IMG/VR virus record: IMGVR_UViG_3300010938_000951
Location: 124,001 to 188,000 of that record
Direction: 5' to 3' (one strand)
DNA length: 64,000 bases
Of this stretch, positions 52,628-52,699 are shown piece by piece. The position numbers and the translations under genes are program-made. Each line of letters starts with the position of its first letter. The stretch's first letter is position 1. The notes below the pieces were generated by a model that saw only the letters and a program-made list of their open reading frames with translations, had not been told where the DNA came from and searched no databases.

Positions 52628-52699
52628 GCGCCGTTAGCTCAGTGGTAGAGCGGTCGCCTCTAAAACGAACGGTCGTGGGTTCGACCCCCACACGGCGCA
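52628..52699 (+). tRNA. Second amber suppressor tRNA (anticodon CUA), A73, imperfect anticodon stem, no encoded CCA
   Basis: GCGCCGT/ACGGCGC, GCTC/GAGC D stem, GTCGC-ctCTAaa-ACGAA, GTGGG-ttcgacc-CCCAC. Confidence 0.8.

What the first reader, a model, noticed from the sequence alone, without database searches (positions are those of the whole stretch)
52628..52699. Second CUA tRNA with a different identity (A73, Lys-like body) and a weakened anticodon stem
The acceptor, D and T arms are perfect. The anticodon stem has G27.A43 and C31.A39 mismatches and the CCA is not encoded. A73 plus U35 matches amber suppressors charged by LysRS. Two suppressors with different predicted identities could make TAG decoding ambiguous or tunable. 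Alternatively this copy is decaying.
Basis: partly seen in the sequence, partly recalled or inferred. Interest (0 to 1): 0.6.

Follow-up and report, generated by a model that had tools for sequence, protein, structure and literature searches.

The report
Conserved second amber-suppressor tRNA of jumbo phage
This is a real, evolutionarily maintained phage tRNA gene that reads the UAG stop codon; its odd features (two anticodon-stem mismatches, no encoded CCA, a partner suppressor with a different discriminator base) are conserved family traits, not decay, but the phage has no in-frame UAG, so what it reads through is unknown.

Summary
Observation confirmed. Window 52628-52699 (+) is a strong tRNA (Rfam 62.5 bits; ARAGORN) with anticodon CUA, perfect acceptor, D and T arms, G27.A43 and C31.A39, A73, and CAA where CCA would be. 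It lies 10 nt after another CUA tRNA (G73, CCA encoded).

The "decaying copy" reading is rejected. In syntenic relatives both mismatches are kept while the pairs between them change on both sides. C31.A39 holds in 10 of 11 related phage CUA tRNAs, including cultured Xanthomonas and Stenotrophomonas jumbo phages. At least 79 distinct viral CUA tRNAs carry it. Loss of CCA is specific to this orthologue across the clade.

"Different identities" is supported indirectly: the two CUA tRNAs differ at N73 in 11 of 12 independent phage pairs, against 3 of 18 sense doublets here. "Lys-like body" is not specifically supported: with the loop masked, the nearest bodies are Arg, Ile, Val and Lys. Lys charging remains the best guess, because of U35, A73, the loose stem, and the phage's own LysRS.

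The phage uses the standard code. TAG ends about 3.6% of genes, with short tails beyond it, and no gene has an in-frame TAG, also in a complete 481-kb relative. This is a new member of a known kind (phage amber suppressors). Its target is unknown.

The parts
52628..52699 (+). Target tRNA, anticodon CUA (52660-52662), A73 (52699); G27.A43 (52653/52669) and C31.A39 (52657/52665)
   Evidence: ARAGORN; Rfam 62.5 bits; covariation
52700..52702 (+). CAA in place of CCA. C74 is encoded; C75 and A76 are not. The downstream ORF's ATG starts at 52703.
   Evidence: Tail is CAA or CTA in orthologues. In the complete relative G002 this orthologue is the only tRNA of 57 without an encoded CCA.
52544..52617 (+). 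Partner tRNA, anticodon CUA, G73, CCA encoded, perfect anticodon stem (A31-U39), 3-bp D stem
   Evidence: orthologue with compensatory changes in L012
49947..50301 (+). Phage tmRNA, 2.2 kb upstream. A tmRNA also lies close to the CUA tRNAs in G002 and XacN1.
   Evidence: Rfam RF00023 114.9 bits
49055..49456 (+). tRNA-Thr array: upstream synteny anchor shared with relatives
54725..55264 (+). Phage IF3 (infC): synteny anchor used to fetch relatives
   Evidence: TIGR00168 210.7 bits
55273..55348 (+). tRNA-Arg (CCU): downstream synteny anchor
4818..5792 (+). Phage TrpRS (bacterial type): possible charging enzyme for a CUA tRNA
   Evidence: TIGR00233 267 bits against cut-off 177
6895..8088 (+). Phage TyrRS: possible charging enzyme (A73, U35, A36 fit; the long variable arm is absent)
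   Evidence: TIGR00234 369 bits; Pfam

Best explanation
SHOWN:
- The feature is a functional-looking tRNA gene with anticodon CUA, kept by selection.
- It is the A73 member of a conserved pair of amber-suppressor tRNAs in a standard-code jumbo phage. The contig is 267 kb; a complete relative is about 420-480 kb.
- The two anticodon-stem mismatches and the missing CCA are conserved traits of this orthologue, not damage.

INFERRED:
- It is cut from a polycistronic + strand transcript.
- Its 3' trailer is trimmed back to the encoded C74, and a CCA-adding enzyme finishes the end. The phage encodes one.
- It is charged by a synthetase that reads U35 and A73 and tolerates or prefers a loose anticodon stem. 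LysRS is the most likely, either the host's or the phage's own.
- The G73 partner, with its tight stem, goes to another enzyme, most likely a GlnRS-type.
- Both then compete with RF1 at UAG.

INFERRED WITH LOW CONFIDENCE:
- The phage has almost no TAG stops, only short tails behind them, and no in-frame TAG. Read-through would therefore fall mainly on host or competitor messages, or on fresh amber mutations, while the phage's own proteome stays nearly unaffected.
- Two suppressors with different identity sets would make suppression robust to which synthetases the infected cell offers.
For: tRNA and structure.

Selection:
- The orthologue in L012-14 keeps G27.A43 and C31.A39 while 28-42 goes U-A to G-C and 29-41 goes C-G to A-U.
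- In the 11-sequence alignment A1, 92% of cells are paired and 12 pairs change on both sides. No shuffle of 500 reached the observed percent paired, pairs or cells changed on both sides, or covariation score.
- The unpaired cells cluster at 27.43 (6 of 11) and 31.39 (10 of 11); only two others occur, in the acceptor stem.
- At least 119 viral loci and 79 distinct CUA tRNAs carry C31.A39, and their 28-42 and 29-41 pairs are always paired.
- About 31 of the 120 loci returned by a scan that did not fix positions 31 and 39 have C.A. Other tRNAs in the fetched loci show it in 2 of 314.

CCA:
- 63 of 65 tRNAs here encode CCA.
- The A73 orthologue lacks it in L012-16 and is the only such tRNA in G002.
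- The phage has a CCA tRNA nucleotidyltransferase (NF009814, 319 bits).

Identity:
- N73 differs in 11 of 12 CUA pairs.
- LysRS and GlnRS respond in opposite ways to the 31-39 pair, and U35/A73 are Lys identity elements (PMC1483225).
- The phage encodes LysRS (TIGR00499, 495 bits).

No own targets:
- Code 11 reads the contig well, including terminase, portal and DNA polymerase.
- TAG ends 14 of 384 ORFs, with at most 26 codons to the next stop.
- The same holds for the phage part of the complete relative G002.
- The authors of XacN1 likewise found only 18 TAG stops and no read-through targets (PMC5852040).
Against: - There is no expression, CCA-addition or charging data.
- The host is unknown, so E. 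coli identity rules may not apply.
- The loop-masked body is not specifically Lys-like.
- Cultured phages with the same tRNA family have no LysRS, so the phage LysRS is not a required partner.
- In XacN1 both CUA tRNAs share the same mismatched arm, so the stem alone does not separate identities.
- 31.39 mismatches are common in this phage's tRNAs (13 of 65), so that mismatch may be a general trait of these phage tRNAs rather than a suppressor-specific device.
- The benefit of reading through host UAG is unproven.
- The contig is only about 62% complete by CheckV.
Confidence: 0.6

Rival explanations
1. Same molecule, other amino acid. The A73 CUA tRNA is charged with Gln (the usual fate of CUA tRNAs and of TAG-recoding phages), or by the phage's own TrpRS or TyrRS, not with Lys.
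For: - The anticodon arm is Trp-like. The phage's own tRNA-Trp has GCCGC-CUCCAAA-ACGGC, with the same C31.A39 and A37-A39, and RAS14's CUA arm differs from it only at position 35.
- From my own knowledge, the E. coli Su7 suppressor (tRNA-Trp with CUA) is charged with Gln.
- The phage encodes TrpRS and TyrRS.
- G1-C72, A73, U35 and A36 fit bacterial TyrRS.
- Phage TAG recoding is so far only to Gln (bioRxiv 10.1101/2021.08.26.457843).
Against: - A73 and a strong G1-C72 pair are poor for GlnRS, whose identity set is G73 and a weak 1-72 pair (PMC1483225).
- From my own knowledge, bacterial TrpRS wants G73 and C35, and bacterial TyrRS wants the long variable arm, which is absent here.
- No Gln/GluRS-family gene is present in this contig or in G002.
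Confidence: 0.35
2. No dedicated target. The CUA pair is a neutral-to-mildly useful carry-along of a TAG-poor genome. It could act as insurance against amber mutations and as the 'suppressor acquired before recoding' stage proposed for phages. The doublet would then simply follow this genome's habit of keeping two divergent genes per anticodon.
For: - TAG ends only 3.6% of genes at 39% GC, which matches the proposed pre-recoding state.
- 19 of 46 anticodons are present as divergent doublets.
- TAG stops are conserved in only 3 of 6 orthologue pairs, with no conserved extensions.
Against: - The pair is kept, with specific and unusual features, across relatives whose IF3 is 78-96% identical and in distant cultured phages.
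- N73 differs within CUA pairs far more often than within sense doublets.
- Both points argue for a selected role rather than drift.
Confidence: 0.25
3. It decodes in-frame TAG in late (structural or lysis) genes of a TAG-recoded phage, as in Lak and crAss-like phages.
For: - Suppressor tRNAs encoded in a standard-code region are typical of recoded phages.
- This contig is incomplete (62%).
Against: - Opening TAG gives no specific gain in ORF cover anywhere.
- No TAG-ended ORF continues for more than 26 codons.
- Terminase, portal and DNA polymerase are uninterrupted.
- The phage part (about 1-420 kb) of the complete 481-kb relative is equally standard.
Confidence: 0.04
4. It is a decaying duplicate or pseudogene.
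For: - Two stem mismatches, no CCA, and a non-cloverleaf minimum-energy fold.
Against: - It has one of the highest tRNA scores in the window.
- All tertiary-interaction bases are intact.
- The mismatches, A73 and the missing CCA are conserved, with compensatory changes around them.
Confidence: 0.03
5. It has a non-decoding role, for example as a decoy for host anticodon nucleases or another tRNA-targeting defence.
For: - Many of this phage's tRNAs have altered 31.39 pairs (13 of 65).
- From my own knowledge, phage tRNAs are known to escape anticodon nucleases through changes in the anticodon loop.
Against: - The loop CUCUAAA plus G30-C40 is almost invariant across at least 79 sequences. That is what an efficient decoder of UAG needs.
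- No host tRNA with a CUA anticodon exists to be replaced.
Confidence: 0.05

Closest known systems
The two tRNA-Sup(CUA) genes of Xanthomonas jumbo phage XacN1 (AP018399; PMC5852040), and single CUA tRNAs of Stenotrophomonas phages RAS14, CM1 and DLP_6 and Xanthomonas phage Xoo-sp13
   Same: - Same tRNA family: 78-82% identity, loop CUCUAAA, G30-C40, C31.A39, and a weak or mismatched 27.43 pair.
- XacN1 also has a tandem A73/G73 pair with a tmRNA about 1 kb away.
- XacN1 is likewise standard-code and TAG-poor, with no read-through targets found.
   Different: - The window's tRNA lacks an encoded CCA; the cultured-phage copies all have it.
- In XacN1 the two suppressors share one core and differ only in acceptor stem and N73. 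Here the two bodies are unrelated (58% identity).
- This phage also carries LysRS, TrpRS and TyrRS; XacN1, RAS14, DLP_6 and Xoo-sp13 have no LysRS.
Suppressor tRNAs of TAG-recoded phages (Lak, crAss-like; code 15)
   Same: A phage-encoded CUA tRNA lying in a standard-code region among other translation genes.
   Different: Those phages have many in-frame TAG codons in late genes. This phage and its complete relative have none.
E. coli laboratory amber suppressors: Su7 (tRNA-Trp with CUA) and the 'class III' synthetic suppressors that insert Lys (Normanly et al. 1990, as summarised in PMC1483225)
   Same: - The anticodon loop CUCUAAA followed by A39 is as in Su7 (my own knowledge of the E. coli tRNA-Trp sequence).
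- A generic A73 body with CUA is the class that E. coli LysRS mischarges.
- The 31-39 pair tunes the choice between LysRS and GlnRS.
   Different: - These are natural, conserved genes.
- C31.A39 is a true mismatch, which was not among the variants tested in that paper (A-U, G-C, U-A, C-G).
- The host is unknown.

Membership tests
tRNA (Rfam RF00005) | Score above the gathering threshold, and a cloverleaf with conserved tertiary bases (U8, A14, G18G19, TPsiC loop) | tested here: met
   62.5 bits against 29. ARAGORN cloverleaf. U8, A14, GG and UUCGA are present.
tRNA (Rfam RF00005) | The structure is supported by compensatory changes in relatives | tested here: met
   12 of 21 pairs change on both sides, 92% of cells are paired, and no shuffle of 500 reached the observed pairing or covariation score.
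Amber suppressor tRNA | Anticodon CUA in a 7-nt loop with U33 and a purine at 37 | tested here: met
   Loop is C32 U33 C34 U35 A36 A37 A38.
Amber suppressor tRNA | It is matured, aminoacylated and reads UAG in vivo | not testable with these tools
This needs tRNA-seq, charging gels and a reporter.
tRNA-Pyl (ARAGORN's label for any CUA tRNA) | The atypical tRNA-Pyl architecture: 6-bp anticodon stem, 3-nt variable loop, small D loop without G18G19, no TPsiC (from my own knowledge) | tested here: not met
   Canonical D loop with GG, 5-nt variable loop, UUCGA T loop, nominal 5-pair anticodon stem. The only PylS-like signal is the LysRS gene scoring 29 bits against a cut-off of 178.
   Unmasked BLAST neighbours are mostly tRNA-Lys at 79-83%. 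With the loop masked, the twelve nearest are Arg 3, Val 3, Lys 2 and four other types, and the top hit is Ile. Family-wide, Arg is nearest in 29 of 82 and Lys in 11 of 82. The method is 73% accurate.
tRNA-Lys identity set (E. coli LysRS) | U35 and A73; also U34 and U36 (PMC1483225) | tested here: inconclusive
   U35 and A73 are present; position 34 is C and position 36 is A. C34 is accepted by LysRS. A36 is the usual cost of a suppressor.
TAG-recoding (code 15-like) phage system | In-frame TAG codons in phage genes, and ORF cover that rises when TAG is read as sense | tested here: not met
   for this contig; for the complete relative G002.
tRNA pseudogene | Defects that are not conserved in relatives, and loss of covariation | tested here: not met

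The most novel reading that the evidence does not exclude
Standard-code jumbo phages carry a conserved two-identity amber read-through module: one G73 and one A73 CUA tRNA. In this clade the A73 member has a deliberately loosened anticodon stem and is the only tRNA that must wait for CCA addition. The module would impose UAG read-through on the infected cell while the TAG-poor phage genome stays immune. It may work together with the nearby phage tmRNA and with the phage's own LysRS, TrpRS and TyrRS. Lys, Trp and Tyr codons (AAG, UGG, UAC/UAU) are each one base change away from UAG.
Probability: 0.2. Interest if true: 0.75.

Novelty: new member of a known kind. Interest (0 to 1): 0.5.

Why it matters
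Phage suppressor tRNAs are usually explained by stop-codon recoding of late genes. Here, and in cultured relatives such as XacN1, a pair of amber suppressors is kept in genomes that contain nothing to suppress.

Four comparative facts turn "odd tRNA" into testable questions:
- the stem mismatches are conserved;
- only this orthologue has lost its encoded CCA;
- the two partners almost always differ at the discriminator base;
- a tmRNA lies nearby.

The questions are which amino acids go in at UAG, when, and on whose messages. If read-through is aimed at the host, this would be a new kind of translational takeover. If not, these phages show the stage just before genetic-code change. The naturally selected C31.A39 / 27.43 design may also be useful for engineering efficient or identity-tuned amber suppressors.

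Tried and rejected
- TAG recoding: tested by ORF cover with each stop opened, and by the distance to the next stop after TAG, in this contig and in the complete relative G002. Rejected.
- Programmed read-through of particular phage genes: TAG stops are conserved in only 3 of 6 orthologue pairs, with 1-18 codon tails. No support.
- Decay: rejected by conservation.
- Typing the body by nearest neighbours with the loop masked: no clear amino-acid class.
- Ribozyme or other structured RNA next to the CCA-less end: nothing in Rfam at E <= 1 apart from the two tRNAs and one sub-threshold minus-strand match over the tRNA itself.
- Promoter and terminator scan around the pair: promoter-like sites at chance level (16 found, 16.8 expected). 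Terminator-like sites are about twice the shuffled mean (11 against 4.9), but none flanks the tRNA pair on the + strand. Uninformative.
- Synteny search with the downstream ORF 52703-53179: no relatives. IF3 worked instead.
- Near-identity search of phage GenBank records with 5 kb around the tRNAs: no match.
- Host assignment from the high-GC tail of G002: the best matches are 41-46% identical, in unrelated MAGs. No host call.
- Link to phage LysRS: four cultured phages with the same tRNA family have none, and a fifth (Phosso) has only a weak 21.5-bit fragment. LysRS is therefore not a required partner.
- Not done: the large protein searches, structure prediction and complex prediction were not needed, and no contig was taken for human.

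Full report
**1. What is there**

ARAGORN finds 21 tRNA genes in the window, among them two with anticodon CTA, at 52544-52617 and 52628-52700. Rfam's tRNA model scores the second at 62.5 bits against a gathering score of 29, the fourth-best of the window's 20 tRNA matches. The first scores 47.1 bits.

The cloverleaf of the target:
- Perfect 7-bp acceptor, 4-bp D and 5-bp T stems, with the usual U8, A14, G18G19 and UUCGA.
- A 7-nt anticodon loop CUCUAAA.
- An anticodon stem reading G27.A43, U28-A42, C29-G41, G30-C40, C31.A39. Infernal flags exactly those two pairs as non-standard.
- A73, followed by CAA and then the ATG of the next ORF.

Folded alone, the sequence does not give a cloverleaf as its lowest-energy structure (z = -1.4). 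The neighbour does (z = -4.2). The stem is therefore physically weak.

**2. Setting**

The window is bases 124001-188000 of one 266,899-bp viral contig (39% GC, CheckV about 62% complete). It is a jumbo phage.
- Phage genes: large terminase, portal and DNA polymerase; NAD-dependent DNA ligase; rIIA.
- Translation genes: 65 tRNAs, a tmRNA (window 49947-50301), IF3, an EF-G-like factor, TrpRS and TyrRS in the window, LysRS at contig 8822-10441 and a CCA-adding enzyme at contig 260107-261351, a Thg1-like protein and an Rnl1-like RNA ligase.
- Not found: Gln/GluRS, class 2b, class 1a or ArgRS synthetases, or any release factor.

**3. Genetic code**

The contig reads well in the standard code.
- Opening TAG adds less ORF cover than opening TGA or TAA, and lengthens no long gene.
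- In a greedy set of 384 ORFs the stops are TAA 221, TGA 149 and TAG 14 (3.6%). The next in-frame stop after a TAG is at most 26 codons away.
- Terminase, portal and polymerase are uninterrupted.
- Because the contig is incomplete, I fetched a collinear relative judged complete, G002 (481 kb). Its phage part (about 1-420 kb, 41% GC) is equally standard, late region included. Its last 60 kb has 50-58% GC and looks foreign or chimeric.
- TAG stops are conserved in only 3 of 6 orthologue pairs, and no extension is conserved.

So neither recoding nor an obvious programmed read-through gene explains the suppressors. The authors of XacN1 reached the same negative result: 18 TAG stops and no targets (PMC5852040).

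**4. Not decay: the oddities are conserved**

Using the nearby IF3 as an anchor, I fetched 18 viral loci. Eight of them share the local order: the CUA tRNA(s), then IF3, then tRNA-Arg(CCU). The Thr-tRNA array also lies upstream wherever the fetched flank reaches it (five of the eight). The tmRNA was confirmed only in this contig and in G002.

What the orthologues show:
- L012-14 (IF3 96% identical): same acceptor stem, A73 and CAA tail. G27.A43 and C31.A39 are kept, while 28-42 changes from U-A to G-C and 29-41 from C-G to A-U.
- L015: an identical arm, with a CTA tail.
- L016: G-C at 27-43, C.U at 31.39, and a CTA tail.
- L017: G.U at 27.43, C.A at 31.39, and an encoded CCA.

Cultured phages carry the same family. 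XacN1 has two tandem copies, Xoo-sp13 has one, and RAS14, CM1 and DLP_6 have one each; all have C31.A39 and a mismatched or G.U 27.43 pair. Sinorhizobium phage Phosso has U31-A39.

On the 11-sequence alignment A1:
- The cloverleaf is 92% paired, and 12 of 21 pairs change on both sides.
- No shuffle of 500 reached the observed percent paired, pairs or cells changed on both sides, or covariation score.
- The unpaired cells cluster at 27.43 (6 of 11) and 31.39 (10 of 11), with only two others, in the acceptor stem.

Wider sampling:
These held 79 distinct CUA tRNAs. In all of them 28-42 and 29-41 are paired and vary freely, and 27.43 is a true mismatch in 24 and G.U in another 24.
- In a scan that left positions 31 and 39 free, about 31 of the 120 loci returned were C.A, and among the newly found tRNAs 33 were U-A and 17 A-U.
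- Other tRNAs in the same loci have C.A in 2 of 314.

One caveat: 13 of this phage's 65 tRNAs have some 31.39 mismatch, among them its tRNA-Trp with the same C.A and a CUCCAAA-A loop. That mismatch is therefore partly a house style of these phage tRNAs, and the arm looks Trp-like.

**5. The missing CCA is specific and conserved**

63 of the contig's 65 tRNAs encode CCA. The exceptions are the target and a 75-nt tRNA with the Leu anticodon UAG, and both end A73-CAA. The A73 CUA orthologue lacks CCA in L012-16. In G002 it is the only tRNA of 57 without one; the other apparent exception there is an ARAGORN boundary slip.

C74 is always encoded. I infer that the trailer is trimmed to C74 and that the end is completed by a CCA-adding enzyme, which the phage supplies. 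Whether this delays activation of the suppressor cannot be told from sequence.

**6. Two identities?**

The partner always has G73 and an encoded CCA, but it has two unrelated bodies across the clade: CCGCTCT... here and in L012, and TCTCGCA... with U1-A72 in L015 and L016. XacN1's two copies share one core and differ only in acceptor stem and discriminator, A against G.

In 10 further viral loci with two CUA tRNAs, N73 differs in 9. Counted as independent pairs, that is 11 of 12. By contrast, only 3 of the 18 sense-anticodon doublets in this contig differ at N73 (Fisher p = 9e-5). This is good indirect evidence that such pairs are kept so that different synthetases see them.

Which synthetases is inference:
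- U35 and A73 are LysRS elements; G73, U35 and a weak 1-72 pair are GlnRS elements.
- E. coli amber suppressors with generic A73 bodies insert Lys.
- Loosening or tightening the 31-39 pair moves suppressors between LysRS and GlnRS in opposite directions (PMC1483225).
- That fits A73 plus a loose stem here, against G73 plus a tight stem in the partner.

Limits on this inference:
- With the loop masked, the body is nearest to a mix of Arg, Ile, Val and Lys tRNAs. "Lys-like body" is not established, and the tRNA-Lys BLAST hits owe much to the similar loop.
- The family's cultured carriers have no LysRS, so host enzymes normally do the charging.
- My estimate is about 40% Lys. Most of the rest goes to Gln, and some to the phage's own TrpRS or TyrRS.

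**7. Function**

I hold with high confidence (about 0.85-0.9) that this is a selected, decoding-competent amber suppressor tRNA.

Its biological target is open. My preferred reading, with low confidence, has two parts. Read-through in the infected cell falls on host or competitor messages, or on new amber mutations, because the phage's own genes avoid TAG. And two identity sets make charging robust across hosts.

The "suppressor acquired before recoding" scenario of Borges et al. (bioRxiv 10.1101/2021.08.26.457843) is a serious rival.

The tmRNA lies close to the CUA tRNAs here, in G002 and in XacN1, and within the fetched flank in 18 of 210 CUA-tRNA loci. That is a lead without a baseline.

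**8. Known or new**

Phage-encoded amber suppressors, including a tandem pair in XacN1, are known and annotated. This gene is a new member of that kind.

In the three full-text paper searches I ran, I did not find the following described:
- the conserved C31.A39 and 27.43 weakening;
- the orthologue-specific loss of CCA;
- the near-universal difference in discriminator base within CUA pairs.

**9. Limits**

- The host is unknown.
- The identity rules come from E. coli.

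Noticed in passing
whole contig (G000:C1), e.g. window 3275-3431 (His x2), 3822-3986 (Arg-UCU x2), 3990-4156 (Arg-ACG x2): 19 of 46 anticodons are present as two divergent genes (57-80% identity), usually adjacent. N73 is the same in 15 of the 18 sense doublets. The reason for a double tRNA set is unexplained; two hosts, or escape from tRNA-targeting defences, are possibilities.
   Followed up: partly
window 1169-1243 and 1090-1166: There are tRNAs with Leu anticodons (UAG, CAG) but class-I size (75-77 nt, no long variable arm). The UAG one is the only other tRNA without an encoded CCA, and it also ends A73-CAA. A similar short Leu-CAG tRNA is in Stenotrophomonas phage DLP_6.
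   Followed up: no
contig 41327-41403 and 43345-43419; window 49300-49377; G002 50073-50149: Some tRNA-like genes have irregular anticodon loops. ARAGORN reads 4-base 'ttaa' and 'tttt' anticodons and a 2-base 'cg'. The complete relative has a UUA (ochre) tRNA, although TAA is the commonest stop.
   Followed up: no
window 4818-5792, 6895-8088, 48197-48994, 29876-31150, 54725-55264; contig 8822-10441, 69971-72055, 260107-261351, 232349-232744: The phage carries a large translation kit: TrpRS, TyrRS, LysRS, IF3, an EF-G-like factor, a CCA-adding enzyme plus a second PolyA_pol-family gene, a Thg1-like protein and an Rnl1-like RNA ligase. Lys, Trp and Tyr codons are each one base change away from UAG. 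Not all synthetase families were searched.
   Followed up: partly
contig tRNAs, e.g. 65737-65810 (Trp), window 49055-49456 (Thr): 13 of 65 tRNAs have a non-standard 31.39 pair (A.C, C.A, C.C, C.U, A.G). The tRNA-Trp has the same C31.A39 and A37-A39 as the CUA family.
   Followed up: partly
window 49947-50301; L001 2652-3072; G002 170047-170403: A tmRNA lies about 1-3 kb from the CUA tRNAs in this phage, in its complete relative and in XacN1. 18 of 210 viral CUA-tRNA loci have a tmRNA in the fetched flank. No baseline was computed.
   Followed up: partly
window 52700-52705: The ATG of ORF 52703-53179 starts 3 nt after A73. Cutting out the tRNA would leave that message almost leaderless. The arrangement is not conserved in L012, L015 or L016, and the ORF has no relatives or Pfam match.
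   Followed up: partly
G002 about 420000-480838 (L282-L284): The last 60 kb of the 'complete' relative has 50-58% GC against 41% elsewhere, and poor ORF cover in code 11 that rises sharply if TGA is read as sense. The best genome matches are 41-46% identical, in unrelated MAGs. It may be a chimeric assembly or a foreign, perhaps TGA-recoded, segment.
   Followed up: partly
contig 52986-53137 and 84229-84302: The Gln(CUG) doublet also splits G73/A73, like the CUA pair. A tRNA with the Arg anticodon CCG has a body that looks like the phage's Gln tRNAs (TCAGGG...TCGTCTAA...).
   Followed up: no
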